A DNA stretch of 64,000 nucleotides from Epithemia pelagica (taxonomy: Eukaryota > Protista > Bacillariophyta). The translations under genes and the position numbers were made by a program. The DNA lies in assembly GCA_946965045.2 (NCBI GenBank), contig OX337238.1:2108001-2172000 (forward strand), in the 5' to 3' direction. Of this stretch, positions 16,302 through 38,943 are shown piece after piece. Below the pieces are notes generated by a model. That model did no database searches. It saw only the letters and a program-made list of their open reading frames with translations, and was not told the DNA's origin. Position 1 is the first letter of the stretch, and each line of letters begins with the position of its first letter.

Positions 16302-16377
16302 CTCCGTCTTGCTCCATCATTGTATCCATGCACGTTCCAGGTAGCTCATGTTTTGTCGGAGCAATGAAACGACAGAA

Positions 16378-16424
16378 AACCCGGATTTGACGTCATATTT
16401 CCGGGTTCTTCGTGACGTGTCACG
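16378..16424. promoter_or_regulatory. Palindromic TGACGTCA (CRE/bZIP-type) site in a near-palindrome, plus a second cgtgac-gt-gtcacg palindrome, upstream of the PP2A pseudogene
   Basis: aacccggatttgacgtcatatttccgggtt (16378..16407) and cgtgacgtgtcacg (16411..16424); duplicated near 33313..33359. Confidence 0.3.
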
Positions 16425-16580
16425 CTCCAGGTTTGGTTTTGTAATTTGTAAATGCTATAGGGTCAGCCTCAAGAGTCCAAAGAGAACAGAGAAAGAGAGA
16501 AAGTGTTGGAAGGAGGGCTGAGGTTCGTCTTCAACGATCCGGTGCTCTTCTACAGAGGTGCGCTGTGTTTCCTTTAGAAA

Positions 16581-19500
16581 TCACTTGCTATTACTCTCGT
16601 TACGTTTTAACTCAATAGAATGAGATCGTTTGACGATCTCCGCGTAGGACGGTTTCGTCCATGACACCTTCTCATCTGGGCATGACACCTTCTTACCTGG
16701 GCCACTCAGTACGTCACTGTTTTCTTCCTGCTTGGGATTGTCATTGGGATTTCGTTCATCGTTGAGGGTTGACGGCAAGACCGTTCCCTTTGTTGGTCCT
16801 TCTTCGTCTCCTTTTTCAACACGCTCCTCCAACATAGGAGCGGTCTTGTCCTTTAGTGTGTTGATGTGCTTATGACCCAGAAGCACGTCACGAAATTTTC
16901 GAAACAGGGCTCCTTGTAATGGTTTGGTATAAAAATCGGCCAACATTTGTTCCGTTGGACAGTAAAAGATTTCAATATTCTCTTGTTCGACACGATCCTT
17001 GATGAAGAAGAAGCGTATGTCAATGTGCCGGGATTGCTTCCCGGCGGACCGCAGTCCATTTTTCTCAAGTCGGATTGCGCTCTGATTATCTTGCGCGAAA
17101 GTGCTTTTGACGTCATAACCTTGTTCGGCTAAGAAGCGTTTAGCCCATATGGTGTTGGGTAGGTAGTCACTCGCACCAACAACTTCTGCCTCGGTGGAGC
17201 TTTTGGTATTAAGCTTTTGCTTTCGGGACTTCGTCACCAGTGCTCCTCGTCCGAGTGACATGACACCACCCGTGTGGCTTTTCATATCGGAGTGGATCGC
17301 GTACGATGCGTCGACCCAGGTCACTAAGTTCCGAACGTCGTCGGCGGCGAGGATGTAGGTGAGGTCTCTTGTTCCATGTAAGTATTCAAGGACGCGCTTG
17401 AGCTTCATGCGGTCCTGCTCGGTGCATGTGCTCACACGTGTGGTGAGGAAAGCAATGGCTGTCTGGATATCTGATCGTGCGCGTGTTGACATATACAGGA
17501 GTTTCGCCGTGATGCTATGAAACATATCGGCCTTCTCTTTTGGCAGTTTCATAGCCGTATGATTGACCTCAAAAAGATCCTTCTTGGCTGGAGTTGGTGC
17601 CGTGTTGGTGATTGGTTCGTCGAAAGCCGCGATTGCCTCATCGATGTACTGTTCCATTTTTAATTCGACTGTTCCGTCACCCTTGAATGCGATGTTCATG
17701 CCTAGGTACGTGTGTTCGTTTCCACGTGTTACCGTCATTTTTTCAAAACGGCGTTCCAATTCCTTGATGATGTCCGTCACGACCTCGCTTTGTACGTGTG
17801 ATATCTTCAAATCATCCACGTACCACGCAATGGTTGCTTGTGTTCCGTTGATCATGGCGTTGGCTACGCACTGTTCGTAGGGGTTAACTTCAAAACCCAT
17901 TTCTTCTAGTGCACCAAGGAGCATCTCATACCACAGCAGTGCTGACCGAACACAGCCGTATAACGCCTTGTTTAGTCTCACGTAGATCACCTTCTTTCCG
18001 TTCTCAAAAGTAACGTATTGCTTATACTCCTCATTCATCTTGCAAAAAACATCGACCACGGGTCCCTCTAGCTTCATCAGAACAAAGTCAGGCATGAGTG
18101 CCTTCAGATAGGCTCCCGCGATGTCGGCTGTTGCGACGTCCCGACGCTCGATGGCGTCTATCATGAGTGTGAACATTAGTCCATCGCTAGACAATGCCGG
18201 AGACGCGATTGAGCCTTTGTCATATTTGTCGCGTTGTGGGCGTCCGTCGGCACAGCTGCGCCCCTTGATCTTTCCACATCTTTTCTCTTTGATGAGGTTT
18301 ACAGAACGAAGCGCCTCGCGCTTCTGTTCTCTTGTCAGCTCATGTGCATGTTTGGGATCGAAGACTGCTTGTTCATCCAACTGCAGAAATTCCTTGAGGA
18401 GCGCGTCGATGGCTGGTTGTCCGTACCTTTTGATGCCCGCAGCGGCACTCATTTGGGTCAGCATGACCTCGCGCTGTATTTTTTGTGTGGCATTCGCGAT
18501 GCTGGGGCGGTTTGGCTGAATGTACTTGCTCGTCGCCAAATCCCACGCGTTGTTTTTGTTGATTTCCTTCATTGTTGCTTCGGGCAAGAAGCGGGCTGCA
18601 ACTTGTGCTAGCGCAAAATGCAGGTATTGATGGTCGTACCTGTGCTCATAGGACCTCTCACGGTCCACACGCAGGTTGTAGACACCCGCGTTGTTTTCTT
18701 GTGTGGCAGAGTCTTCCTGCGCTCCTGGCTCTTGCGCTCCTTCTTCTTGCGTGTCTACATCTTCCTGCGGGAACAGGGGTTCGCTATTATTGTCGGCTTC
18801 TTCCTCGAGCACTATCTCCATGGTTTCGTCAGCGTTGTCGCTGGCTCCCTCTTCACTCTCGCTCACTTCCGCCACCTCTGCCACTAATGCGTCTTGATCG
18901 TTTTGTTCCGGTGGTTGGTGATCGTCATGTACGTCTTCATCTTGTTGTTGCACGTCGTTTGGTGGTGCTGGTGGCTCATGTACCATTGCCTCGTCTGCCG
19001 GCGCGTCTTCTTGTTGTGTCCCAATGTCGCCGTCGTCGGTATCCTCGACGTCGGCGTCGTCATCGGGGACCTCGTCGTTTGGGCCCCATTCAAAAAGTAG
19101 GTTTCCACCTGTTATTTCCTTCTGTCGTTGGGCTTGGGCCATCTGGTGTACGCGCTCGATAACGTCGGACGTGATGGGCAGTGGTGTCCACTGGTTTCGT
19201 GCCAACTTTCTCCCAGTGGTGAGGGACATGAAAGGGTAGCTTCCTTGTTCGTTTCCAGTCGGGTTCAACGCGATGGCACCGGTCGTTCGGGCGGCGTTCG
19301 TGTTACTTGGTGTGTTGTCTTCAAACACCTGGGCGTACTGTCCAAACTCGATCTTCATCTTCGAATAGTCCGGGTCAGGCAGACCGGTCACAATCTTGCG
19401 TGGACTTTCCGTGGGACTGATACCGCCGATTGCACTGGGAAGCTGGTTAAGCGACTTGATCGCATGTATCACGAGTTCCTTGACAATAATGACTGGGTAC

Positions 19501-21809
19501 GACCTATACGGGAGTCCGTGAACTGTGGAGCGCACGCGCTCCTTGATTGTTCGCACGGATCGTTCTACGTCGCCCACGTGATCGTCTTGCGCAGCCACGT
19601 TGAGATGGATGGGGAGGAGACGATTCCTGAGCGGTTCGAATTGTAGGTCGGCGTGTAGGTCGCTGACGACGAAACCACGTGTCCGGTACATCTGCAAGAT
19701 TCCCTGTAGGTCGTTCATGATGTGTGATGCGCTGGGGTTCCCACTGGTGTTCATGGCAGTAATTGTGCGAAATTTGATGTGGCGAGCAATGGTATGAAGG
19801 AAAGGAAGGCCTTGTACGAAGAGTACGTCGGCACACAAAGTGAGTTGTCCGTGGGCGTCTTTGATGGAGGGGGAAACCGGAGTCGGGGTTATGCTGGGAA
19901 CGTGAGTGGATTTACGCTTCGTTGTTTTGCCTTTGAGGGCTGCAACGTCCGGCCCGTAGATGATAAGGGCGCGCTTGGCGTCGTCGGAGGTGACGGGGGA
20001 GTTGCGGATGAGGTTGTTCTTGAGGGCGCTTTCGAAATCGCGCTGCGAAGGTCGACCAAGTAGACGATATAGGCGTCGGGCTTGTTGCGCTCCTTCGACC
20101 TCGCGGGGGGAGAAAGAAGCGGCGTTGGCCGACACGGTGGACACAAAGGTGAGGGGCACGGCCGATGGAGCGGCGGTGTCGTGAACATAAAGGCCACTTT
20201 TGACCTCGTGGAAAACCAGGGGCGGCTTGTCGGTACGGTGGACGAGGAAAGACGCGTCACCAGCGGAGTCCATGGTGACACGACACACGCGACGGACGGC
20301 GGCAAGCGACAAGATGTTGGCAATAGAATCCGGATTGAACCAGACGGTGCCGAAATTGGGGACGTCGCCGACGAGATGGGAGGTTTGCGAGCCACCGTTG
20401 GTGTGGACTGTCATGGCGTTAGCGCTGGGGCGAATGTTCATGAGGAGAGACCGATTACAAAAAACAGAAACGGTAGACTGGCTGTCCAAGAGCACCCAAG
20501 ACTTCGGAAGGGAGACGGCAGCTTGTGCAAAACTGAAACCGGACGAGGTCGTGGACTGGAGCAACTGGAGCTCGTCGGGGGAAACTGGACAGCCGTTGGC
20601 ATAATGGCCGAAGCCCTTGCAACGATAACACTTCACGTTTTCGTGCAAAATACCGTCGGTGCCAGGAACAGGAAGCCCATTCTGGACGAACTGGAGGCCA
20701 TCGCTGGTGGCGGGTGCTCCCGAAGACGCTCCGGATGAGGAGGAGGCGTTCTCTGAGGCAGGCTGGGAAGGAGAGGCAGGCTGGGAAGGAGTGGTTACCT
20801 TGGGTGGCCGATAACTGACCAGGAGGGAGTATGCACTGGCCAAATCCCTGGGATATTGATCCGTGTTGCGACTATGTTGGTTCTCGAGATCAACGAGGAG
20901 GCCACCGAAACGCTTTCCGTCGGCATTGTGTAAAAACTGGATTGCAAGGAGTCTATCCTTGGCCGCGCGTGCGAATTCGAGTTCACCGGTTAACTCATCG
21001 TCCTCTTCTTCCACCATGGTAAGAAGGCCGGGATCGGCGCCAACCTGGCCGCCGTAATGCTCAAGAACATCAACGTTATAGCGAAAATGTTGTAAGTAAT
21101 CGGAAAGGGACTCTCCTGGACCCTGTCGGTAGCTATAGAAATTTGCCAGCGCATCACGCAGCGACAAAGGGTAGTAGCGTTTCTCTTCGAAACGGTGACG
21201 AATGCCTTTGATCTCCTTGAGGAGCCAGGCACAGTCATTGCGTCGCTCACGCTCCTTGAACTCGTCCAGACCCTGCAACTTAGCCTTCATTGCTTCCGAA
21301 CACTGGCCCCAGATTACTGCAAAGATGGCACGTAGATTGCCATTGAGCTCGTGTTGACGAGTTACACAGAGTTGGCATTCCTTCTCGAACATGGCAATGC
21401 GGACTCGACTCGTCTCATCTTCAGGGGGTTCCGTGGGTTCCTCAATCGTTGGGTTCTCGAGATTGCGAGTGAGGGTGACTAGGTCGTCAGGGTACTTCAA
21501 CTCCTTCGCTATATACGCGCCGAGGGCCTCAATCGTCTTCGCGAACTGTCGCTTGTCGTCGCATTCAGCGAATACTTGGAAAACGTGCCCATTCATTTCA
21601 GACGTGTCGCCTTTAAACTTCGCCTTGCCCTGACCTCTTGTGCCACCACTTCCACCGTTGTTATTGCGGCGTCCTCGACCACCGCGGCCGTTGCGTCCAC
21701 CCCGCCGGTTACCGTTACCACCATTAGACGATTGTCCGCTCGTGGTACTGCCACCGTTCGAGGTCGCTCCTTCTGAGGGGGGCGCCTGCGATTGAGGTGA
21801 TGTACTCAT
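16581..21809 (-). CDS. E1 gag-pol polyprotein (Gag, CCHC knuckle, protease, integrase, RT, RNase H)
   Basis: CYRCKGFGHYANGC, LLDSQST, integrase CADVLF/HADLQF/VERSVRTIKE, RT WYVDDLKI and RNase H WVDASYA in copia order. The ORF runs about 80 codons into the 3' LTR. Confidence 0.95.
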   Translation of the reverse strand: MSTSPQSQAPPSEGATSNGGSTTSGQSSNGGNGNRRGGRNGRGGRGRRNNNGGSGGTRGQGKAKFKGDTSEMNGHVFQVFAECDDKRQFAKTIEALGAYIAKELKYPDDLVTLTRNLENPTIEEPTEPPEDETSRVRIAMFEKECQLCVTRQHELNGNLRAIFAVIWGQCSEAMKAKLQGLDEFKERERRNDCAWLLKEIKGIRHRFEEKRYYPLSLRDALANFYSYRQGPGESLSDYLQHFRYNVDVLEHYGGQVGADPGLLTMVEEEDDELTGELEFARAAKDRLLAIQFLHNADGKRFGGLLVDLENQHSRNTDQYPRDLASAYSLLVSYRPPKVTTPSQPASPSQPASENASSSSGASSGAPATSDGLQFVQNGLPVPGTDGILHENVKCYRCKGFGHYANGCPVSPDELQLLQSTTSSGFSFAQAAVSLPKSWVLLDSQSTVSVFCNRSLLMNIRPSANAMTVHTNGGSQTSHLVGDVPNFGTVWFNPDSIANILSLAAVRRVCRVTMDSAGDASFLVHRTDKPPLVFHEVKSGLYVHDTAAPSAVPLTFVSTVSANAASFSPREVEGAQQARRLYRLLGRPSQRDFESALKNNLIRNSPVTSDDAKRALIIYGPDVAALKGKTTKRKSTHVPSITPTPVSPSIKDAHGQLTLCADVLFVQGLPFLHTIARHIKFRTITAMNTSGNPSASHIMNDLQGILQMYRTRGFVVSDLHADLQFEPLRNRLLPIHLNVAAQDDHVGDVERSVRTIKERVRSTVHGLPYRSYPVIIVKELVIHAIKSLNQLPSAIGGISPTESPRKIVTGLPDPDYSKMKIEFGQYAQVFEDNTPSNTNAARTTGAIALNPTGNEQGSYPFMSLTTGRKLARNQWTPLPITSDVIERVHQMAQAQRQKEITGGNLLFEWGPNDEVPDDDADVEDTDDGDIGTQQEDAPADEAMVHEPPAPPNDVQQQDEDVHDDHQPPEQNDQDALVAEVAEVSESEEGASDNADETMEIVLEEEADNNSEPLFPQEDVDTQEEGAQEPGAQEDSATQENNAGVYNLRVDRERSYEHRYDHQYLHFALAQVAARFLPEATMKEINKNNAWDLATSKYIQPNRPSIANATQKIQREVMLTQMSAAAGIKRYGQPAIDALLKEFLQLDEQAVFDPKHAHELTREQKREALRSVNLIKEKRCGKIKGRSCADGRPQRDKYDKGSIASPALSSDGLMFTLMIDAIERRDVATADIAGAYLKALMPDFVLMKLEGPVVDVFCKMNEEYKQYVTFENGKKVIYVRLNKALYGCVRSALLWYEMLLGALEEMGFEVNPYEQCVANAMINGTQATIAWYVDDLKISHVQSEVVTDIIKELERRFEKMTVTRGNEHTYLGMNIAFKGDGTVELKMEQYIDEAIAAFDEPITNTAPTPAKKDLFEVNHTAMKLPKEKADMFHSITAKLLYMSTRARSDIQTAIAFLTTRVSTCTEQDRMKLKRVLEYLHGTRDLTYILAADDVRNLVTWVDASYAIHSDMKSHTGGVMSLGRGALVTKSRKQKLNTKSSTEAEVVGASDYLPNTIWAKRFLAEQGYDVKSTFAQDNQSAIRLEKNGLRSAGKQSRHIDIRFFFIKDRVEQENIEIFYCPTEQMLADFYTKPLQGALFRKFRDVLLGHKHINTLKDKTAPMLEERVEKGDEEGPTKGTVLPSTLNDERNPNDNPKQEENSDVLSGPGKKVSCPDEKVSWTKPSYAEIVKRSHSIELKRNESNSK

Positions 21810-22269
21810 CACGGGCCCTCGTCAACAATGCAACGTTCTTCCTGTCCCGTTGTATGTGTCTACCGGTGTCGGTGTAAATGTAGACCCAGTTTCCCGCTGT
21901 CTTGTAAGTCACACCCGTGTGATCCCTTCGGGTGGACACTCCTCCTTCGACCTCTGGTGGTACCGGGTTGAGTATCTCAACAGCGTCGCCTGGGTTAAAA
22001 CGCCGCACACTGATATTCCGACCCCAAAGACTCTGATCTGCCCGTGGGTGGTGTGGACTAAGTCTTCCTTGTGTGCGGTCAGCACGAGAATCCTCTGCTG
22101 TCTCTTCTTGGTGTTGTGGTTCTTGGTTCGTCGCGTTTGGCGCGGTCGGTGATGTGAGTCTCTCCACCTCTCGAAGGGAAGACAGACGATCAAGGAGCAC
22201 TACTTGCTCAGCGGCTAGCTCTTGGAGACAGAAAAGGATGTCTTCAATGTCGTCGTCTTGTGCAGCCAT
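21724..22269 (-). CDS. E1 accessory ORF with coiled-coil N-terminus and SH3/KOW-like beta domain
   Basis: ATG-initiated 181-aa ORF inside the LTR pair, overlapping the gag start; contains FNPGDAVEILNP...TGVTYKTAGNWVYIYTDTGRHIQRDRKNV. Confidence 0.6.
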   Translation of the reverse strand: MAAQDDDIEDILFCLQELAAEQVVLLDRLSSLREVERLTSPTAPNATNQEPQHQEETAEDSRADRTQGRLSPHHPRADQSLWGRNISVRRFNPGDAVEILNPVPPEVEGGVSTRRDHTGVTYKTAGNWVYIYTDTGRHIQRDRKNVALLTRARDEYITSIAGAPLRRSDLERWQYHERTIV

Positions 22270-22328
22270 AAAACGTCAGGAAACAATGCAATGACGCGTG
22301 GGGGTTCAGGAAGTGCCTATGTAATCGA

Positions 22329-22916
22329 TTACCTGGTGCGTCGCTTCTTCTTCGAGCGCTTCTCTCTCACCGATCTGGTGGTTTCTTTGGCTGCCGGCTT
22401 AGCGTCTGGTTCCGCCTTCCGGGTTCGGTTACTTTTGTCCTTGTTGGGACTGGCAACGACTTCGACGCTGCTATCTCCCTGTCCTTCTCTTGGTTCGCTC
22501 TCCGCTTCAGATTCACCTTGTGTGTTCGCGGGGGCTGCCACTGCAGTGGAGGAGGTTACTGCGGAAGGGTACTGGTATTCCGCACGAGCACGAGCAACTT
22601 GGTTGTCGCCTGCGTCGGGACCCTTGAAGTAGTCGTCGGTAGAGACTGTTGCGCTTGTGGCTCGGTGAGGAGTGCTTCGTCTACTCGACTCACTAGACAA
22701 TCCCTCGTCCTCGTCGTCAATGGCGTTTTCAAGCGTTTGATACGCGGCGCCAAGACGTTCTTCGTTTCGCACTTGTGCTTCTCTGTTCGCTTCCAATTCG
22801 TTGTGGTATTGGGTGAGAATCCGAGACCGATCTTGGTGGATCCTGGCACGCTGGCGGTGTAGGGATTCGATGACTTGCTTGGCGTATAGGACTCGGAATA
22901 CTTTGTCTCATTCCAT
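22329..22916 (-). pseudogene. E1 ORF0 (coiled-coil, acidic/basic tail) with an in-frame TGA at codon 3
   Basis: ATG GAA TGA GAC AAA GTA TTC.. at 22916 is in frame with the 22796..22329 ORF; the frame is otherwise open (DKVFRVLYAKQVIESLHRQRARIHQDRSRILTQYHNELEANR...). Confidence 0.45.
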
Positions 22917-22939
22917 GCAGGATGTTTCAGGATAGTCTT

Positions 22940-22953
22940 TTCTATTGAGTTAA
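22940..22953 (-). promoter_or_regulatory. E1 primer-binding site complementary to its own LTR (candidate self-priming PBS)
   Basis: Minus-strand TTAACTCAATAGAA directly after the 5' LTR is the exact reverse complement of minus-strand TTCTATTGAGTTAA at 23070..23057. Confidence 0.8.
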
Positions 22954-24456
22954 TGTTGGAAGGAGGGCTGAGGTTCGTCTTCAACGATCCGGTGCTCTTC
23001 TACAGAGGTGCGCTGTGTTTCCTTTAGAAATCACTTGCTATTACTCTCGTTACGTTTTAACTCAATAGAATGAGATCGTTTGACGATCTCCGCGTAGGAC
23101 GGTTTCGTCCATGACACCTTCTCATCTGGGCATGACACCTTCTTATCTGGGCCACTCAGTACGTCACTGTTTTCTTCCTGCTTGGGATTGTCATTGGGAT
23201 TTCGTTCATCGTTGAGGGTTGACGGCAAGACCGTTCCCTTTGTTGGTCCTTCTTCGTCTCCTTTTTCAACAGAAAGCGGTGGATGGCATTTTGAAATGCA
23301 AAAAAGCCTCTGAGGCAAATATAGCATGAACCGTACTGTTGTTTTCGGTTCCCCCTTGGCATTTCAATCCCATCATTTGACGCTCCTTTTACATCGCTCG
23401 AGCCTCTTGCAAACACCCCAAACAAATTGTGGGCAATGAGGAATGAACGAGACCTCCAAAACAGCGACGAGAGAGATAAGGAATGTCGAATTGTCTACAG
23501 CTCACACGCTCACACCAAGTATCCTCGGCCATTCCCTGGAAACCAGCTCACTTGTGGACGTTCCTTGGACCTGGGTCAGACTTGTCGGCCAGAATGCTCT
23601 GTTTCATGAGCCGTTCAGGATAACAACCGGCTTGGACCAACAGAGATGAGTGGCCAGCCGGCAAGAACTCTGACGCGTTTTTAGTGTCGAACTTTCTTGA
23701 ACTTGGCCCTTTTCCTCGTCCGACGAATCTGTTGTGTGGACAATGACCGTAAACTGCCGTATAGGGTAACTGTAGAAGGAAAAAAAGTGTTTTTTTTTCA
23801 TGGATTAATGGATCGTTTCCCTTGTCTCTCTCTAATGGACGACTCTGATGGGCAAGAGAGATGATCCAGCCTTTCTTGCGGTGGCTGAGACTGTGACATC
23901 TCTTTCGAGTAGGTAGTACCAAGTCATTCCTTGAGCATATCATGTTGTTTGTATAGCTTTGGAAAAGACAGTTCGCATCTGCCTCTATACCACGATCCAA
24001 GCATAAGAAGCATACATTGGCCAATTATATGAATGCCAACAACACCAACAGCCTGTCCACCTTGAAAACGACAAACAACTCCCACGTACCAACAAGGAGA
24101 GTGAGACAAGCTGATGGCAATCGAGTTTGGCCAATCTATTCGTGAAATAAAATGTCAAGACTTTTGCCAGTGGAAGGAGATGGAAGGAAGGTGTAGTTCC
24201 GGAGGTTGAAATTATGGGGAAAATGGATCAGGAACTCCTGCTAACCCAAACACTTGTGTCCTACAATTTCACAGCAAAGGACAACCGTATATACTTGTAG
24301 TGTTTTTCTTGATCTTGTTAATAAGCTTGCAAATATGCTGTCTTATGAATACTATTGATTTGGGGAAACGCTCCTATTGCTGTCCCTTTGAGGTGTTGAC
24401 AGTGCTTCCGCTCCTTGTGAAGGTGCTGGAGTTGATTGGGGTTTGGGGAAACACTC

Positions 24457-26090
24457 CTATTGCTGTCCCTTTGCAGTGCCCACAATTTCTGCCTTGGAAT
24501 TACAACCAACTGGAGGTGCTGGAGTTGGTTGTAAATCCAAGGCAGAAATTGTGGGCTCCAAATGTTCTTTGAACCAAATCGAATCCAGCCCCTTTGGCAT
24601 TGCGAAATTATTCACCTCCGTCAAAGAGTTGGACACTGCCAAAATTCGTTTTGTTTCAACACTCTTGGGTGGTTCGGCATTTTCATTTCTTGTCACCAGT
24701 GTCTCTACCTCTGTCTGAAAGCTTTGGACCGCAACAGCAGACCACTGTTTGGAAATCTCCTTCTTCTGTTTAGTTTCTTTGTTGGAGCTTTCAGTGTTGC
24801 CAATGCCCAGAGATTGGCACCAGTCATTGAGATTGGAATGTAACCGAGCATAGTGTTTGCACTGAATCGCCAAAATAGTCACGTTCCACTCCTTGTCCAC
24901 CAGAACAACAAACAAATCTGGTCCTTGGGCATTTGGTACCCCCTGGGATACTACAAAGCAAGTGTTGTTTTTCACTTCGTTTTGGCTGAAAAAAGGCTCT
25001 TTAAGAGCAAGTTCCGACAGTTCTTCCTTCAAATCCTCTTCGCGCATTTCTTCATTCTTCCGACGGCTGCGTGGCCACCCATTCTCTAACTCGTGTGTTT
25101 CGGTTGCATATCCTTGCACCTCAAATAGCCTCATACAGTGAAGAGATACGACCTCCTCAAACTGCTTTCCCATTGATGGAAGCAACAATTTCGTACTCCC
25201 GGAGCACGACAAGTACTTCAGGGCGTTGGATGTGCCGTTCCTCCTTGCCAGTCCCTTCTCAAATAAGGTGTCGTATTTCTCCTCGAAAAACAGCTCCATG
25301 GCAACGTTCTTGTCATTGGAACCTTCCGAATCACCTCCTTTTGCGACTCCCGATCCCTCACTTGGCTCTCCTTTTTCTTGGATAACATTGTTGTACAAAG
25401 CGTTCTTCACATTCATCAAATGACTCTCAAGTTGGGACTCCAGTTCATTCCTGGTCTTGTCGTTCGACTGGTTGATCGCTTTATTCAGTGCCTCCTCCTG
25501 GTGGTAGACAAATGCGCAACGTAGCAATAGTTCCCGATCCTGGTTTTCCAACTCACCCACAGTATTGGTTCGCAAATAGTACCGCACAGGGTAGTCCATT
25601 ATGTGCTGATAAGACGTAATGGCTTTCAGTCGTTCCGTATAGCGTGTTTCTTTTGTAGTCACACCATATGCATCTACCTCATGTTCTATAGCACGTAGGA
25701 TTGGTAAGACTCCTCGAAAGAACATCCTGGCATTGGTCCTCAGAATGCGGCAATATCCGACCTCAAGAGCAGCCTTCACAGCATTGTGCAATTCCTGCTC
25801 CTTCCGCAGCAGGTTTTCTAAATTTGGTTGCTTCATTGTTACTATCTTGACAAGGCTCGGACTTGTGCCGACTCGACCTCTGTGGATGGCGTCTGTGCCA
25901 GTTCCAACAAGAACGAGTTGCACGCGCCCTTTAGGACGTACAAGATACCTGTGACGTTCAATTATTTCCTCGACGCAAGAGACAAGACCCTCCACAAGGT
26001 CAATGTTTGTTGCTTCATCGATGACGATGGCCACCTTTTCAGGTCTTTCATTCTTTGGAAATTCACCCTCAAGCCATTTCTGAACATACG
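24457..26090 (-). pseudogene. 5'-truncated duplicate of the NTPase-REase gene (C-terminal half only)
   Basis: Nearly identical to 34606..36239; homology stops at catacg (26090) at the E2 junction. Confidence 0.9.
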
Positions 26091-26355
26091 TTAACCTGCG
26101 AGTAGTGGAAAAGAACGGCGGTCTCTTTCCACTGAGCAATCCGTAAAAGGATACTTATTCTGATAATCACTATTATGTTAGTCCTAAATTCTCACTAAAT
26201 TCACTTATCTTTTCTTCAATATCTTTTGGATGAGTCATTCCATCCACTCGTTCACATCTACGTCGCTCATCATTCGTGATTGATGAGTCTTGTTGCCAGG
26301 TATAAGCTTGCTACCCCAGCTATACTCGCACTCCCTCTCAAGCGCAATATCTCGG

Positions 26356-32922: not shown

Positions 32923-33011
32923 TGTTCTCACCTTCTCTCTGTCCTATCTTGCCAGAGCACTCACTTCCTTGACACCGTATGACCTTGGGAAACCTTCTAC
33001 AGCGTAATACT

Positions 33012-33024
33012 TGGGCTCATAACC
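33012..33024 (-). promoter_or_regulatory. E2 PBS complementary to the 5' half (anticodon arm) of initiator tRNA-Met
   Basis: Reverse complement TGGG-CT-CAT-AA-CC is the iMet anticodon arm ending at position 40, the half-tRNA primer type known for copia and Ty5. Confidence 0.85.
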
Positions 33025-33260
33025 TGCGAGTAGTGGAAAAGAACGGCGGTCTCTTTCCATTGAGCAATCCGTAAAAGGATACTTATTCTGATAATCACTA
33101 TTATGTTAGTCCTAAATTCTCACTAAATTCACTTGGATCTTTTCTTCAATATCTTTTGGATGAGTCATTCCATCCACTCGTTCACATCTACGTCGCTCAT
33201 CATTCGTGATTGATGAGTCTTGTTGCCAGGTATAAGCTTGCTACCCCAGCTATACTCGCA

Positions 33261-36239
33261 CCATGCACGTTCCAGGTAGCTCAGGTTTTGTCGGAGCAAT
33301 GAAACGACAGAAAACCCGGATTTGACGTCATATTTCCGGGTTTTTCGTGACGTGTCACGCTCCAGGTTTGGTTTTGTAATTTGTAAATGCTATAGGGTCA
33401 GCCTCAAGAGTCCAAAGAGAACAGAGAAAGAGAGAAAGCGGTGGATGGCATTTAAAATGCAAAAAAGCCTCTGAGGCAAATATAGCATGAACCGTACTGT
33501 TGTTTTCGGTTCCCCCTTGGCATTTCAATCCCATCATTTGACGCTCCTTTTACATCGCTCGAGCCTCTTGCAAACACCCCAAACAAATTGTGGGCAATGA
33601 GGAATGAACGAGACCTCCAAAACAGCGACGAGAGAGATAAGGAATGTCGAATTGTCTTCAGCTCACACGCTCACACCAAGTATCCTCGGCCATTCCCTGG
33701 AAACCAGCTCACTTGTGGACGTTCCTTGGACCTGGGTCAGACTTGTCGGCCAGAATGCTCTGTTTCATGAGCCGTTCAGGATAACAACCGGCTTGGACCA
33801 ACAGAGATGAGTGGCCAGCCGGCAAGAACTCTGACGCGTTTTTAGTGTCGAACTTTCTTGAACTTGGCCCTTTTCCTCGTCCGACGAATCTGTTGTGTGG
33901 ACAATGACCGTAAACTGCCGTATAGGGTAACTGTAGAAGGAAAAAAAGTGTTTTTTTTTCATGGATTAATGGATCGTTTCCCTTGTCTCTCTCTAATGGA
34001 CGACTCTGATGGGCAAGAGAGATGATCCAGCCTTTCTTGCGGTGGCTGAGACTTCGAGTAGGTAGTACCAAGTCATTCCTTGAGCATATCATGTTGTTTG
34101 TATAGCTTTGGAAAAGACAGTTCGCATCTGCCTCTATACCACGATCCAAGCATAAGAAGCATACATTGGCCAATTATATGAATGCCAACAACACCAACAG
34201 CCTGTCCACCTTGAAAACGACGAACAACTCCCACGTACCAACAAGGAGAGTGAGACAAGCTGATGGCAATCGAGTTTGGCCAATCTATTCGTGAAATAAA
34301 ATGTCAAGACTTTTGCCAGTGGAAGGAGATGGAAGGAAGGTGTAGTTCCGGAGGTTGAAATTATGGGGAAAATGGATCAGGAACTCCTGCTAACCCAAAC
34401 ACTTGTGTCCTACAATTTCACAGCAAAGGACAACCGTATATACTTGTAGTGTTTTTCTTGATCTTGTTAATAAGCTTGCAAATATGCTGTCTTATGAATA
34501 CTATTGATTTGGGGAAACGCTCCTATTGCTGTCCCTTTGAGGTGTTGACAGTGCTTCCGCTCCTTGTGAAGGTGCTGGAGTTGATTGGGGTTTGGGGAAA
34601 CACTCCTATTGCTGTCCCTTTGCAGTGCCCACAATTTCTGCCTTGGAATTACAACCAACTGGAGGTGCTGGAGTTGGTTGTAAATCCAAGGCAGAAATTG
34701 TGGGCTCCAAATGTTCTTTGAACCAAATCGAATCCAGCCCCTTTGGCATTGCGAAATTATTCACCTCCGTCAAAGAGTTGGACACTGCCAAAATTCGTTT
34801 TGTTTCAATACTCTTGGGTGGTTCGGCATTTTCATTTCTTGTCACCAGTGTCTCTACCTCTGTCTGAAAGCTTTGGACCGCAACAGCAGACCACTGTTTG
34901 GAAATCTCCTTCTTCTGTTTAGTTTCTTTGTTGGAGCTTTCAGTGTTGCCAATGCCCAAAGATTGGCACCAGTCATTGAGATTGGAATGTAACCGAGCAT
35001 AGTGTTTGCACTGAATCGCCAAAATAGTCACGTTCCACTCCTTGTCCACCAGAACAACAAACAAATCTGGTCCTTGGGCATTTGGTACCCCCTGGGATAC
35101 TACAAAGCAAGTGTTGTTTTTCACTTCGTTTTGGCTGAAAAAAGGCTCTTTAAGAGCAAGTTCCGACAGTTCTTCCTTCAAATCCTCTTCGCGCATTTCT
35201 TCATTCTTCCGACGGCTGCGTGGCCACCCATTCTCTAACTCGTGTGTTTCGGTTGCATATCCTTGCACCTCAAATAGCCTCATACAGTGAAGAGATACGA
35301 CCTCCTCAAACTGCTTTCCCATTGATGGAAGCAACAATTTCGTACTCCCGGAGCACGACAAGTACTTCAGGGCGTTGGATGTGCCGTTCCTCCTTGCCAG
35401 TCCCTTCTCAAATAAGGTGTCGTATTTCTCCTCGAAAAACAGCTCCATGGCAACGTTCTTGTCATTGGAACCTTCCGAATCACCTCCTTTTGCGACTCCC
35501 GATCCCTCACTTGGCTCTCCTTTTTCTTGGATAACATTGTTGTACAAAGCGTTCTTCACATTCATCAAATGACTCTCAAGTTGGGACTCCAGTTCATTCC
35601 TGGTCTTGTCGTTCGACTGGTTGATCGCTTTATTCAGTGCCTCCTCCTGGTGGTAGACAAATGCGCAACGTAGCAATAGTTCCCGATCCTGGTTTTCCAA
35701 CTCACCCACAGTATTGGTTCGCAAATAGTACCGCACAGGGTAGTCCATTATGTGCTGATAAGACGTAATGGCTTTCAGTCGTTCCGTATAGCGTGTTTCT
35801 TTTGTAGTCACACCATATGCATCTACCTCATGTTCTATAGCACGTAGGATTGGTAAGACTCCTCGAAAGAACATCCTGGCATTGGTCCTCAGAATGCGGC
35901 AATATCCGACCTCAAGAGCAGCCTTCACAGCATTGTGCAATTCCTGCTCCTTCCGCAGCAGGTTTTCTAAATTTGGTTGCTTCATTGTTACTATCTTGAC
36001 AAGGCTCGGACTTGTGCCGACTCGACCTCTGTGGATGGCGTCTGTGCCAGTTCCAACAAGAACGAGTTGCACGCGCCCTTTAGGACGTACAAGATACCTG
36101 TGACGTTCAATTATTTCCTCGACGCAAGAGACAAGACCCTCCACAAGGTCAATGTTTGTTGCTTCATCGATGACGATGGCCACCTTTTCAGGTCTTTCAT
36201 TCTTTGGAAATTCACCCTCAAGCCATTTCTGAACATACG
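33261..36239. repeat. Copy 2 of the tandem duplication, containing the empty E1 target site
   Basis: gagagaaag|cggtgg at 33430..33444 carries a single GAAAG. Confidence 0.95.
34508..34621. repeat. 31-bp direct repeat pair spanning the NTPase-REase stop codon
   Basis: tttggggaaacRctcctattgctgtcccttt at 34508..34538 and 34591..34621; also present in the duplicated copy near 24359..24472. Confidence 0.8.
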
Positions 36240-37854: not shown

Positions 37855-38943
37855 GATACCAAAATAGAGATGCAAAATCTTTTTTTCTTTTTGGGTGCTC
37901 TGTCGGTTCTGTGAGAGGAGGTGATGGATGGATGTGTGGTGCGTACAATACGTGTGTCCGAATGACCTTGTAGCGGGATTGGGAATCACGGGTGTAAGGG
38001 AATGGTCATTACCTCGTACCGAATTACTACTTTTGGGGAAATCTTCGTTCGTAGTGTAAGCTTAGTCTTTTAGGAACTGGTTTGTACGAAGAGTATAAGA
38101 CAGTTTATCAGACCCAATGGTATCGAAAGATGACGACAACGACGCGAGCTAACACCAGGAATGCCACTACGAACGAGGGGGATGGAAAGCCGGAGGCGGA
38201 GGAAAGTGAATAAATAATCACGGGCGCCCCCTTTGTAACCTACGAAGGGCCTCGCCATGCCTCGCTACGCACCGCCTGGCATCGCCCGGCCCCTAGTTAT
38301 GTGTTCGCTAGTGGGTACCGTGGTCGCTATTTGGCCCCTACGTGAGCGATTTGCCCCAAAAGGGCACCCTTAGTTTAGTCATCATAATTTCTGATAGTTT
38401 GATTGTTGCAAGCCGTATATTGCGTCTGGCCGTCAGTTTTTATTCAGTTTATCAGACCCATACGTCTGTTGTTTCCCCACTGTTCGCCGGACGGCAAGCG
38501 CCTGATCAACGCTCGGGAGTTGTTCGCGCTAAGCGGCTTCGTCACTCGCTCGCTTGCGTCATCTCTGTGACTTGTTTTTGTCACTGTGGGACCCACTCGC
38601 TAATTTGTGACTTGCGACTGCACAACGTACCGTGCACGTGCTCGTACACGTGGACTGTCCATCCACGCGCTCCGTACGACTCAATTATATAAGCCTGCTG
38701 GCTTTTGACACGTGCTTGCTTGCTCGCGGAATCGCCGGTTCGCCGACTCGCGGATTCGCCGATCGCTAGCTCGCTCGCTCGCGGAATCGCCGGATGACTA
38801 CTCGCCGATTCACTCGCAGATTGTTGGCTCACAGAAATTCGCTCCTCTCATCACAATTGCAAATTTCTGCACAAGAACAAGCCTTCCCTTGCCGTCCGTT
38901 TGACCTTCTACTACCCTCCTACCCTTCATCCGACCCTTGAACC

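What the first reader, a model, noticed from the sequence alone, without database searches (positions are those of the whole stretch)
22940..23073. Candidate self-priming (tRNA-independent) Ty1/copia retrotransposon
Seen: E1 has neither a TGG-type nor a half-tRNA PBS. The 14 nt abutting the 5' LTR (sense TTAACTCAATAGAA, 22953..22940) are the perfect complement of TTCTATTGAGTTAA at 23070..23057 inside the same LTR. That stretch starts exactly 1 nt after the A of an initiator-consensus TCATTC (TCAKTY, A at 23071). Established: S. pombe Tf1 and related gypsy elements prime reverse transcription by folding the first ~11 nt of the transcript onto the PBS and cleaving it with RNase H. Inference: E1 transcripts start at about 23071, fold back over a ~103-nt R/U5 loop and self-prime with the 3' end exactly at the LTR edge. 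I know this mechanism from the gypsy Tf1/sushi group and cannot recall it for copia-order elements; novelty was not checked.
Basis: partly seen in the sequence, partly recalled or inferred. Interest (0 to 1): 0.92.

Follow-up and report, generated by a model that had tools for sequence, protein, structure and literature searches.

The report
Self-priming copia retrotransposon clade in diatoms
This diatom jumping gene, and all its relatives checked in three diatom genera and in environmental samples, appears to start copying itself with the first 14 letters of its own RNA instead of a host tRNA; this trick is proven in fission-yeast Tf1, predicted for one plant copia lineage, and was not found reported for diatoms.

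Summary
E1 (window 16504-23271, minus strand) is a young, intact Ty1/copia element. Its ends are fixed by a 5-bp target duplication and by a paralogous empty site. The 14 nt abutting the 5' LTR (22953..22940) are the perfect complement of 23070..23057 inside the LTR, directly after TCA.

The pairing is a conserved trait of the clade, not chance:
- I found 16 distinct box/PBS sequence pairs. They come from five families of this genome, Nitzschia inconspicua, Fragilaria crotonensis and metagenome contigs.
- Every pair is a perfect 14/14 Watson-Crick match, with no G-U pairs.
- 10 of the 14 positions show compensatory double changes.
- The box always follows (T/C/G)CA, which fits the published diatom initiator TCAH+1W.
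- One E1 copy (contig 13) carries G>A in both LTR boxes together with C>T in its PBS.
- A box predicted from a PBS alone was then found in that element's 3' LTR.

The exact 14-mer occurs nowhere else in the genome, and the sampled tRNAs match at most 6 nt.

Tf1-like self-priming is therefore well supported. The transcription start and the cleavage step were not shown, because no RNA data exist.

It is not new for copia as such: the plant TAR lineage (Houba, Osr-1) was already predicted to self-prime. I found no report for diatoms. First-stage readers flagged the same signature at three other places in this genome.

The parts
16504..23271 (-). Complete Ty1/copia-type LTR retrotransposon E1 (6768 bp)
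   Evidence: LTR pair found. TSD and empty site. Four further full copies in the genome at 96-99% identity over the 5' LTR region.
22954..23271 (-). 5' LTR, 318 nt, TGTTG...CAACA
   Evidence: 317 of 318 positions identical to the 3' LTR.
16504..16821 (-). 3' LTR, 318 nt
23071..23073 (-). TCA of an initiator-like motif (CTCATTCT). It fits the diatom TCAH+1W and the oomycete YCAYTYY consensus. The inferred transcription start is at 23071 or 23070.
   Evidence: Sequence. Consensus motifs from PMC4686930 and PMC3599244. TCA precedes the box in 14 of 16 relatives; the other two have GCA or CCA. The start site itself was not mapped.
23057..23070 (-). Self-primer box TTCTATTGAGTTAA in the 5' LTR; inferred to be nt 1-14 (or 2-15) of the transcript
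   Evidence: Perfect complement of the PBS. Covaries with the PBS across relatives.
22954..23056 (-). R/U5 segment forming the 103-nt loop closed by the box-PBS stem
   Evidence: Fold. Loop length is 57-130 nt in relatives and the loop sequence is not conserved.
22940..22953 (-). Primer-binding site TTAACTCAATAGAA, abutting the LTR-terminal CA
   Evidence: The exact 14-mer occurs only in E1 copies in the genome.
16607..16620 (-). Same box in the 3' LTR, the copy that supplies the box of progeny LTRs under the model
   Evidence: G000:C11:2124607-2124620.
16822..16830 (-). Polypurine tract GGAGGAGCG directly upstream of the 3' LTR
   Evidence: The same GAGGAGCG|TGTTG junction is present in relatives; the more distant families have AAGGAGTG.
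16581..21812 (-). Polyprotein ORF, 1743 aa: gag with CCHC knuckle, protease, integrase-like region, RVT_2 reverse transcriptase, RNase H. It runs through U3 of the 3' LTR and stops 24 nt after the box.
   Evidence: RVT_2, E = 1.3e-17; 46% identity to a Nitzschia inconspicua polyprotein from residue 66 into the RNase H part (printout cut there); weak zf-CCHC; weak integrase-core matches.
23272..23276 (.). Target-site duplication GAAAG, upstream side in element sense
16499..16503 (.). Target-site duplication GAAAG, downstream side in element sense
33405..33475 (.). Paralogous empty site: both E1 flanks joined with a single GAAAG (33434-33438)

Best explanation
E1 belongs to a large, diatom-wide clade of Ty1/copia retrotransposons that prime minus-strand DNA synthesis with their own RNA, as Tf1 of S. 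pombe does.

Proposed steps:
1. Transcription starts in the LTR at an initiator-like YCA|YT, so the 14-nt box forms the first 14 nt of the RNA (or nt 2-15).
2. The box folds back over R/U5 (103 nt in E1, 57-130 nt in relatives) and pairs with the 14 nt that abut the LTR.
3. A cut after box nt 14, by the element's RNase H by analogy with Tf1, leaves a 3'-OH opposite the first base after the LTR.
4. Extension copies U5 and R and produces a correct ...CA LTR end.
5. Plus-strand strong-stop synthesis copies the attached RNA primer, so the PBS of progeny is re-templated from the box. This keeps the two strictly Watson-Crick complementary as they drift.

Shown here: the complementarity, its exact abutment to the LTR, its conservation and covariation, and the absence of another source of the primer sequence in the genome.

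Inferred: the transcription start, the cleavage and the enzyme that makes it, whether pairing is in cis or between two RNA copies, and the re-templating of the PBS.
For: 1. A perfect 14/14 pairing abuts the LTR. The LTR edge is fixed by the TSD and an empty site. Chance expectation is 3e-7.
2. Within the E1 family, four copies keep the pair. The contig-13 copy has G>A in the box of both LTRs and the matching C>T in the PBS.
3. Sister families in the same genome (63-68% and 44-46% aa identity in RT-RH) have different boxes, each matched 14/14 by its own PBS: TTCTTTGGAGATAA, TTCTTTGGAAACAA, TTCTTTTTAAAATA and CTCTTTGTAATCTA.
4. Elements with 100% identical LTRs in Nitzschia inconspicua and Fragilaria crotonensis show the same pattern. 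So do six metagenome or Logan contigs.
5. RNAalifold on 16 sequences returns the 14-bp stem as the only consensus structure. Ten of its 14 pairs show double changes, none shows a one-sided change and none is broken.
6. 196 of 196 cells are Watson-Crick and none is G-U. Column shuffles give a mean of 75% paired and a maximum of 81% in 2000 trials. Slid registers give 40-54%.
7. Blind prediction: a new PBS variant, TTGTCTCCAAAGAA, turned up in a pattern search. Its predicted box TTCTTTGGAGACAA was then found in that element's 3' LTR.
8. The box always follows CTCA, GTCA, ATCA or TTCA (once CCA, once GCA). This fits the diatom Inr-like TCAH+1W, with +1 being the base after TCA (PMC4686930), and the oomycete INR YCAYTYY (PMC3599244). 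The complementarity never extends to the A of TCA.
9. No host source of the primer was found. The exact 14-mer occurs only in E1 copies. One-mismatch hits outside E1 number 5, against 21 for the reversed control pattern. Twenty nuclear tRNA genes match at most 6 nt of the E1 PBS.
10. Negative controls: the unrelated copia elements E2 and E3 in the window (22-23% aa identity) have only 5-7 nt matches.
11. The MFE fold contains the stem, z = -3.9.
Against: - There is no direct evidence for the transcription start, the cleavage or the primer. No RNA run holds the element. The three runs laid are DNA contigs. Contigs of 5.4-5.9 kb that might have been transcripts turned out to be repeat-collapsed, permuted assemblies.
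- The tRNA set tested is incomplete: only 63 of 1840 candidates were scored, about 20 of them nuclear, and initiator tRNA-Met was not among them.
- TCAHW is a short motif, expected about twice per LTR by chance (my estimate, not a tool result). Only its fixed position next to the box carries weight.
- Pfam does not recognise the integrase, and the profile matches to retroviral integrase cores are weak, E = 0.08-0.8. The copia domain order therefore rests on RVT_2 and on the position of that weak match.
- A conserved stem at the PBS could in principle serve packaging, dimerisation or translation control while an unidentified primer is used.
Confidence: 0.8

Rival explanations
1. The box-PBS stem is a conserved RNA structure with another role, such as packaging, dimerisation, translation control of the adjacent start codon, or masking of the PBS. 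Reverse transcription would then be primed by something not yet identified.
For: The stem is the only conserved structure in R-U5. It sits right before the first ORF: in Nitzschia element L058 the ATG lies 2 nt after the PBS. No priming data exist.
Against: The 3' edge of the pairing coincides with the LTR/internal boundary in every element. Only a primer-binding site requires that position. No separate PBS-like conserved block follows it: the sequence after the 14 nt differs between families. A purely structural RNA stem should tolerate G-U pairs, yet 0 of 196 cells are G-U, which fits templated copying better.
Confidence: 0.12
2. The PBS binds a host tRNA, a tRNA fragment or another host small RNA, and the LTR box merely resembles that RNA.
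For: The tRNA catalogue tested was incomplete. Copia elements elsewhere use internal tRNA fragments (PMC6317226).
Against: At least six different PBS sequences coexist in this one genome, and each matches its own LTR 14/14. A host primer would hold the PBS constant. The exact E1 14-mer is absent outside E1 copies, and one-mismatch hits are at control level. The best tRNA match to the E1 PBS is 6 nt. No PBS starts with TGG.
Confidence: 0.04
3. The complementarity is a chance inverted repeat in E1.
For: Short AT-rich inverted repeats do occur: three loci in the window have 14-nt inverted repeats within 318 nt.
Against: Expectation at that exact position is 3e-7. The pairing recurs in 16 sequence-distinct versions with full compensation.
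Confidence: 0.005

Closest known systems
Tf1/Tf2 of Schizosaccharomyces pombe and the Tf1/sushi group (Ty3/gypsy chromoviruses; Levin 1995/1996, Lin & Levin 1997, Butler 2001, as summarised in PMC7175516 and PMC6317226)
   Same: The PBS abutting the 5' LTR is complementary to the start of the element's own transcript rather than to a tRNA. The predicted fold-back spans R/U5. The primer 3' end falls opposite the first base after the LTR.
   Different: The superfamily differs: RVT_2 copia-type RT here, Ty3/gypsy there. The duplex is 14 nt here and 11 nt in Tf1 (PMC7175516). For Tf1 the start site, the RNase H cut between nt 11 and 12 and the primer are shown experimentally. Here all three are inferred. 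No second conserved helix comparable to Tf1's U5-IR-like stem was found.
Plant Ty1/copia TAR lineage, including Houba and Osr-1 (self-priming predicted by Neumann et al. 2019, PMC6317226; earlier proposal cited there)
   Same: Ty1/copia elements with no tRNA-type PBS, in which at least 10 nt just downstream of the 5' LTR are complementary to a region in the 5' LTR. In both cases the evidence is computational only.
   Different: The host and, probably, the lineage differ: stramenopile diatoms against land plants. Maumus et al. 2009 (PMC2806351) describe diatom-specific copia lineages. The phylogenetic relation to TAR was not tested here. The diatom case adds a fixed 14-nt length, a fixed position after an initiator-like TCA, and explicit covariation across genera.
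Fungal GalEa copia elements with a 'conserved hairpin site' instead of a PBS (Donnart et al. 2017, PMC5445492)
   Same: Copia elements without a tRNA-type PBS and with a conserved self-complementary feature at the PBS position.
   Different: In GalEa the feature is a local palindrome or hairpin. The authors state they could not find any LTR sequence complementary to it. Here the partner is an LTR box 57-130 nt upstream.
CoDi (copia from diatoms) groups of Phaeodactylum and Thalassiosira (Maumus et al. 2009, PMC2806351)
   Same: Diatom Ty1/copia elements with short TG...CA LTRs, 5-bp duplications and high LTR identity. E1's clade is probably one of these lineages.
   Different: That paper does not discuss a retrotransposon primer-binding site or priming. 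Assignment of E1 to a CoDi group was not tested, because no reference sequences were at hand.

Membership tests
Self-priming (Tf1-type) LTR retrotransposons | The sequence immediately 3' of the 5' LTR is complementary to a stretch of the element's own LTR (R region) and not to a tRNA 3' end | tested here: met
   14/14 match abutting the LTR in E1 and in 15 further sequence variants. No PBS starts with TGG.
Self-priming (Tf1-type) LTR retrotransposons | The complementary stretch is the very 5' end of the transcript | not testable with these tools
   No RNA runs; only DNA contigs were laid. Indirect support: the box always follows an Inr-like (T/C/G)CA, consistent with the diatom TCAH+1W, and the pairing never includes the A.
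Self-priming (Tf1-type) LTR retrotransposons | The pairing is functionally constrained (compensatory evolution of primer and PBS) | tested here: met
   10 of 14 pairs have double changes, none a one-sided change and none is broken. 196 of 196 cells are Watson-Crick, against 75% in column shuffles. There is a compensated variant within the E1 family and a blind prediction was met.
Self-priming (Tf1-type) LTR retrotransposons | No host tRNA or host RNA fits the PBS as well | tested here: inconclusive
   Genome-wide, the exact 14-mer occurs only in E1 copies and one-mismatch hits are at control level. Twenty nuclear tRNA genes match at most 6 nt. The tRNA list is incomplete.
Self-priming (Tf1-type) LTR retrotransposons | RNase H of the element cleaves the RNA duplex to release the primer | not testable with these tools
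   This needs biochemistry. It is known only for Tf1 (PMC7175516).
Ty1/copia superfamily (Pseudoviridae) | Copia-type reverse transcriptase (Pfam RVT_2) | tested here: met
   PF07727, E = 1.3e-17, residues 1176-1409 of the 1743-aa ORF. All homologues carry PF07727.
Ty1/copia superfamily (Pseudoviridae) | Integrase lies upstream of RT in the polyprotein | tested here: inconclusive
   Pfam finds no rve domain. A profile of residues ~560-900 gives weak hits: 12 of 14 are retroviral integrase catalytic cores, E = 0.08-0.8, over the block with invariant H186, V187, E191, R192. The position, upstream of RT, fits the copia order.
Ty1/copia superfamily (Pseudoviridae) | LTRs with TG...CA ends, a 5-bp target duplication and a PPT before the 3' LTR | tested here: met
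   TGTTG...CAACA, TSD GAAAG, an empty site and the PPT GGAGGAGCG.
Plant TAR lineage of Ty1/copia | Phylogenetic placement of RT/RH/INT within TAR (REXdb) | not tested
Only the shared predicted priming mode is known from PMC6317226.
CoDi groups of diatom copia elements | RT clusters with one of CoDi1-7 | not tested
   No reference sequences. The homologues found are diatom proteins from Nitzschia inconspicua and Fragilaria crotonensis.

The most novel reading that the evidence does not exclude
A whole diatom-wide clade of copia elements, with hundreds of RT matches in this genome alone, has given up tRNA priming. It uses nt 1-14 of its own transcript as primer, an origin of self-priming separate from Tf1/sushi and perhaps from plant TAR. 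Because the PBS is re-copied from the primer in each cycle, box and PBS drift together without ever passing through mismatched or G-U intermediates. That would give a built-in lineage barcode that keeps families from cross-priming. The same LTR is packed tightly: U3 is entirely coding, and the pol stop codon sits in or just after the primer box.
Probability: 0.45. Interest if true: 0.7.

Novelty: new member of a known kind. Interest (0 to 1): 0.55.

Why it matters
Self-priming has been proven only for Tf1, a gypsy-type element. For copia elements it is a bioinformatic prediction in one plant lineage. This analysis adds a second copia clade, in a distant eukaryotic group, with unusually clean comparative evidence: 16 compensated variants and no wobble pairs.

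The clade is abundant and recently active in diatoms, which are ecologically dominant algae. Some diatoms can be transformed, so the mechanism could be tested directly.

There is also a practical consequence. LTR annotation pipelines that look for tRNA-type PBSs will mislabel these elements as lacking a PBS. The rule 'TCA + N14 ... CA + reverse complement of N14' gives a simple diagnostic. It may also give the transcription start of each family for free.

Tried and rejected
- RNA evidence for the start site. The look-up of sequencing runs found no RNA run. Read laying on the three holders showed genomic DNA contigs of up to 509 kb, with no starts or ends.
- Contigs of 5.4-5.9 kb from Logan and JGI, fetched in the hope that they were transcripts. 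They proved to be repeat-collapsed, circularly permuted assemblies. One carried adapter sequence. They gave two more box/PBS pairs but no start site. L089 did not contain a recognisable LTR/PBS junction.
I fetched 1.2-1.8 kb pieces instead. Two pieces (L047, L054) missed their 5' LTR, and L053 was not informative.
- The Rfam tRNA search of the genome scored only 63 of 1840 candidates, many of them organellar. The tRNA test is therefore partial.
- Pfam at E <= 1 did not find an integrase or protease domain.
- I looked for further conserved helices in R/U5, such as a Tf1-like U5-IR stem. RNAalifold found none beyond the 14-bp stem.
- I did not run the count of structure pairs, to avoid typing a long dot-bracket string. 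The equivalent controls were computed.
- Literature searches: 'self-priming' with 'diatom', and 'diatom', 'retrotransposon' and 'primer-binding site', gave nothing relevant. The CoDi paper does not discuss a retrotransposon primer-binding site or priming.
- Rejected explanations: chance, a host tRNA primer, and an error in the LTR boundary (the empty site rules that out).

Full report
**Observation**

On the minus strand, E1 has two 318-nt LTRs: 23271..22954 and 16821..16504. They run TGTTG...CAACA and differ at one position. The 14 nt that follow the 5' LTR, TTAACTCAATAGAA (22953..22940), are the exact reverse complement of TTCTATTGAGTTAA at 23070..23057 inside the LTR. That box is preceded by TCA, with the A at 23071.

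The pairing stops at 14 nt on both sides. The loop between the two arms is 103 nt.

The LTR edge, on which the argument depends, is fixed independently:
- The element is flanked by a 5-bp duplication, GAAAG on the plus strand (16499-16503 and 23272-23276).
- Both flanks are duplicated elsewhere in the window, at 33261-36239. There they are joined with a single GAAAG and no element, which is a natural empty site.

By LTR composition, 3e-7 such matches are expected at that position. The minimum-free-energy fold of 23071..22930 contains the stem, z = -3.9.

**What the element is**

The 1743-aa ORF (21812..16581) carries the copia-type RT domain RVT_2, E = 1.3e-17. It aligns from residue 66 into the RNase H part, where the printout is cut, with a 1764-aa polyprotein annotated in Nitzschia inconspicua, at 46% identity. 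A CCHC knuckle is weakly detected.

Pfam does not see an integrase. A profile of the region between protease and RT gives weak but consistent matches to retroviral integrase catalytic cores. The domain order therefore fits copia, but I rate that feature inconclusive.

The genome is 60.5 Mb in 23 contigs and is a diatom by its homologues. It holds five full E1 copies, 96-100% identical over the 5' LTR region.

**Comparative test within the genome**

Four of the five E1 copies keep both sequences. The copy on contig 13 has G>A at box position 8 in both of its LTRs and the matching C>T in its PBS.

An RT-RH search of the genome found many related elements at 63-68% and 44-46% amino-acid identity: 767 first-look candidates, of which 69 were scored. 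I fetched their 5' LTR/PBS junctions and paired them with the 3' LTRs already in hand. Every family has a different box, and every box is matched 14/14 by the 14 nt abutting its own LTR:

| Box | PBS |
|---|---|
| TTCTTTGGAGATAA | TTATCTCCAAAGAA |
| TTCTTTGGAAACAA | TTGTTTCCAAAGAA |
| TTCTTTTTAAAATA | TATTTTAAAAAGAA |
| CTCTTTGTAATCTA | TAGATTACAAAGAG |

One visibly decayed copy (L048) has a single mismatch.

A pattern search for LTR/PBS junctions turned up a further PBS variant, TTGTCTCCAAAGAA. From it I predicted the box TTCTTTGGAGACAA, and then found that box, after CTCA, in the element's 3' LTR.

**Comparative test in other organisms**

A protein search found over a thousand homologues. 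They include annotated proteins of Nitzschia inconspicua and Fragilaria crotonensis and many metagenome contigs.
- Four elements from the two named genomes have 100% identical LTRs, the same GAGGAGCG|TGTTG polypurine junction, and again perfect 14-nt box/PBS pairs with new sequences.
- Six further contigs gave five more new pairs.

In total there are 16 distinct pairs.

**Statistics**

RNAalifold on 16 aligned R-U5-PBS segments returns the 14-bp stem as the only consensus structure. Ten of its 14 pairs show changes on both sides. None shows a one-sided change and none is broken.

Among the 14 distinct rows of that alignment:

| Measure | Value |
|---|---|
| Cells that are Watson-Crick | 196 of 196 |
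| Cells that are G-U | 0 |
| Paired in column shuffles | mean 75%, maximum 81% in 2000 trials |
| Paired in registers slid by 1-3 | 40-54% |

The loop varies from 57 to 130 nt and is not conserved. Two unrelated copia elements in the same window, 22-23% identical to E1, show only 5-7 nt matches.

**Position of the box**

In 14 of the 16 variants the box directly follows TCA; in the other two it follows CCA or GCA. The A never pairs with the base after the PBS.

Kadono et al. 2015 (PMC4686930) propose a diatom initiator-like motif TCAH+1W, in which +1 is the base after TCA. On that reading the box is exactly nt 1-14 of the transcript, as the first 11 nt are in Tf1 (PMC7175516). The oomycete initiator YCAYTYY, with initiation usually at the A (PMC3599244), also fits and would make the box nt 2-15.

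The motif alone is too short to be significant. Its invariant adjacency to the box is what counts. The start site itself could not be mapped, because no RNA run holds the element and the three runs laid are genomic DNA.

**Host primers**

The exact 14-mer occurs 12 times in the genome, all inside the four unchanged E1 copies. Three of the one-mismatch hits are the contig-13 copy. The remaining five are at the level of the reversed-pattern control.

Twenty nuclear tRNA genes, covering 11 amino acids, match at most 6 nt of the E1 PBS. That tRNA list is incomplete.

The stronger argument is that at least six different PBS sequences coexist in one genome, each fitted to its own LTR. A shared host primer would instead hold the PBS constant.

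**Mechanism**

The best-supported reading is Tf1-like self-priming. The 5' end of the RNA folds back onto the PBS and is cut after box nt 14. The new 3'-OH, opposite the first base after the LTR, is extended through U5 and R.

I add one inference. Plus-strand strong-stop synthesis copies the RNA primer still attached to the minus strand. A change in the box of a 3' LTR would therefore reach both progeny LTRs in one cycle and the PBS in the next.

This would explain two observations: no G-U or mismatched intermediate is seen in any intact family, and the contig-13 copy is fully compensated. It also argues against a purely structural role for the stem, because a structural stem would tolerate wobble pairs.

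The cleavage, the enzyme and the choice between cis and trans pairing are all inferred.

**Comparison with what is known**

Self-priming is established for Tf1/Tf2 and inferred for the Tf1/sushi and Tcn1 groups, all of them gypsy-type. Neumann et al. 2019 (PMC6317226) predict it for the plant Ty1/copia TAR lineage and cite an earlier proposal for Houba and Osr-1.

Fungal GalEa copia elements lack a PBS but have a local hairpin with no LTR partner (PMC5445492). The paper that defined diatom copia lineages does not discuss a retrotransposon primer-binding site or priming (PMC2806351). My searches found no report of self-priming in diatom elements.

I therefore file this as a new member of a known kind: a diatom-wide copia clade with a 14-nt self-primer. 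Its relation to TAR and to the CoDi groups was not tested.

First-stage readers of this scan flagged the same signature at three other places in this genome. That fits the clade-wide pattern but is not independent evidence.

**Verdict**

| Item | Verdict |
|---|---|
| Observation | confirmed |
| Interpretation | supported by covariation; transcription start and cleavage unproven |
| Confidence in functional self-priming | about 0.8 |
| Novelty | moderate |
| Interest | 0.55 |

Noticed in passing
window 16326-16510 and 23271-26090, against 33261-36239: Both flanks of E1 are duplicated about 10-17 kb away at 98-99% identity, joined there without E1. E1 therefore inserted after, or into one copy of, a segmental duplication. 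Element E2 (LTRs 26092-26331 and 33020-33261) sits between the two copies.
   Followed up: partly
window 16581-16821; L058:7435-7795; L092:5493-5693: In this clade the polyprotein ORF runs through the whole U3 of the 3' LTR. The stop codon is the last 3 nt of the primer box (TAA in L058 and L092) or lies 24 nt after it (E1). U3 is thus entirely coding, and R/U5 begins where coding ends.
   Followed up: partly
L060:1896-2300, L085:200-568, L086:2079-2504, L087:279-626, L088:370-813, L092:133-423; window 21724-22269 (-): A small upstream ORF of 96-147 aa lies between the PBS and the polyprotein ORF and is conserved among several relatives (blastp E from 1e-7 to 1e-24). It often overlaps the polyprotein start by a few nt. 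E1 has a 181-aa ATG ORF in the same place, with a similar N-terminal DIEDIL..LQEL pattern but no significant BLAST match. Its function is unknown.
   Followed up: partly
window 21813-22939 (-): E1 has a 1.1-kb leader between the PBS and the polyprotein ORF. In the Nitzschia element L058 the ATG follows the PBS after 2 nt. Leader length is therefore very variable in the clade.
   Followed up: no
L087:5499-5682 against L087:1-249: In this metagenome contig the 3' LTR lacks 61 nt that include the primer box, with the deletion lying between short AAGA repeats. This may be a real deletion variant or an assembly artefact.
   Followed up: no
window 24536-24543 and 34685-34692: A second perfect inverted repeat of at least 14 nt within 318 nt is present in both copies of the duplicated segment. 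It is unrelated to E1.
   Followed up: no
window 38447-38464 (E3) and 33002-33019 (E2, minus strand): The two other copia elements in the window have PBS regions with no LTR complement: GTTTATCAGACCCATACG for E3 and TGAGCCCAAGTATTACGC for E2. They belong to distant lineages, 22-23% aa identity to E1. I used them only as negative controls and did not test their primers.
   Followed up: partly
G000 contig 13, about 405-419 kb, against contig 22: Several tRNA hits on nuclear contig 13 have the same scores as hits on the small contig 22. This suggests an organelle-derived insertion in the nuclear assembly.
   Followed up: no
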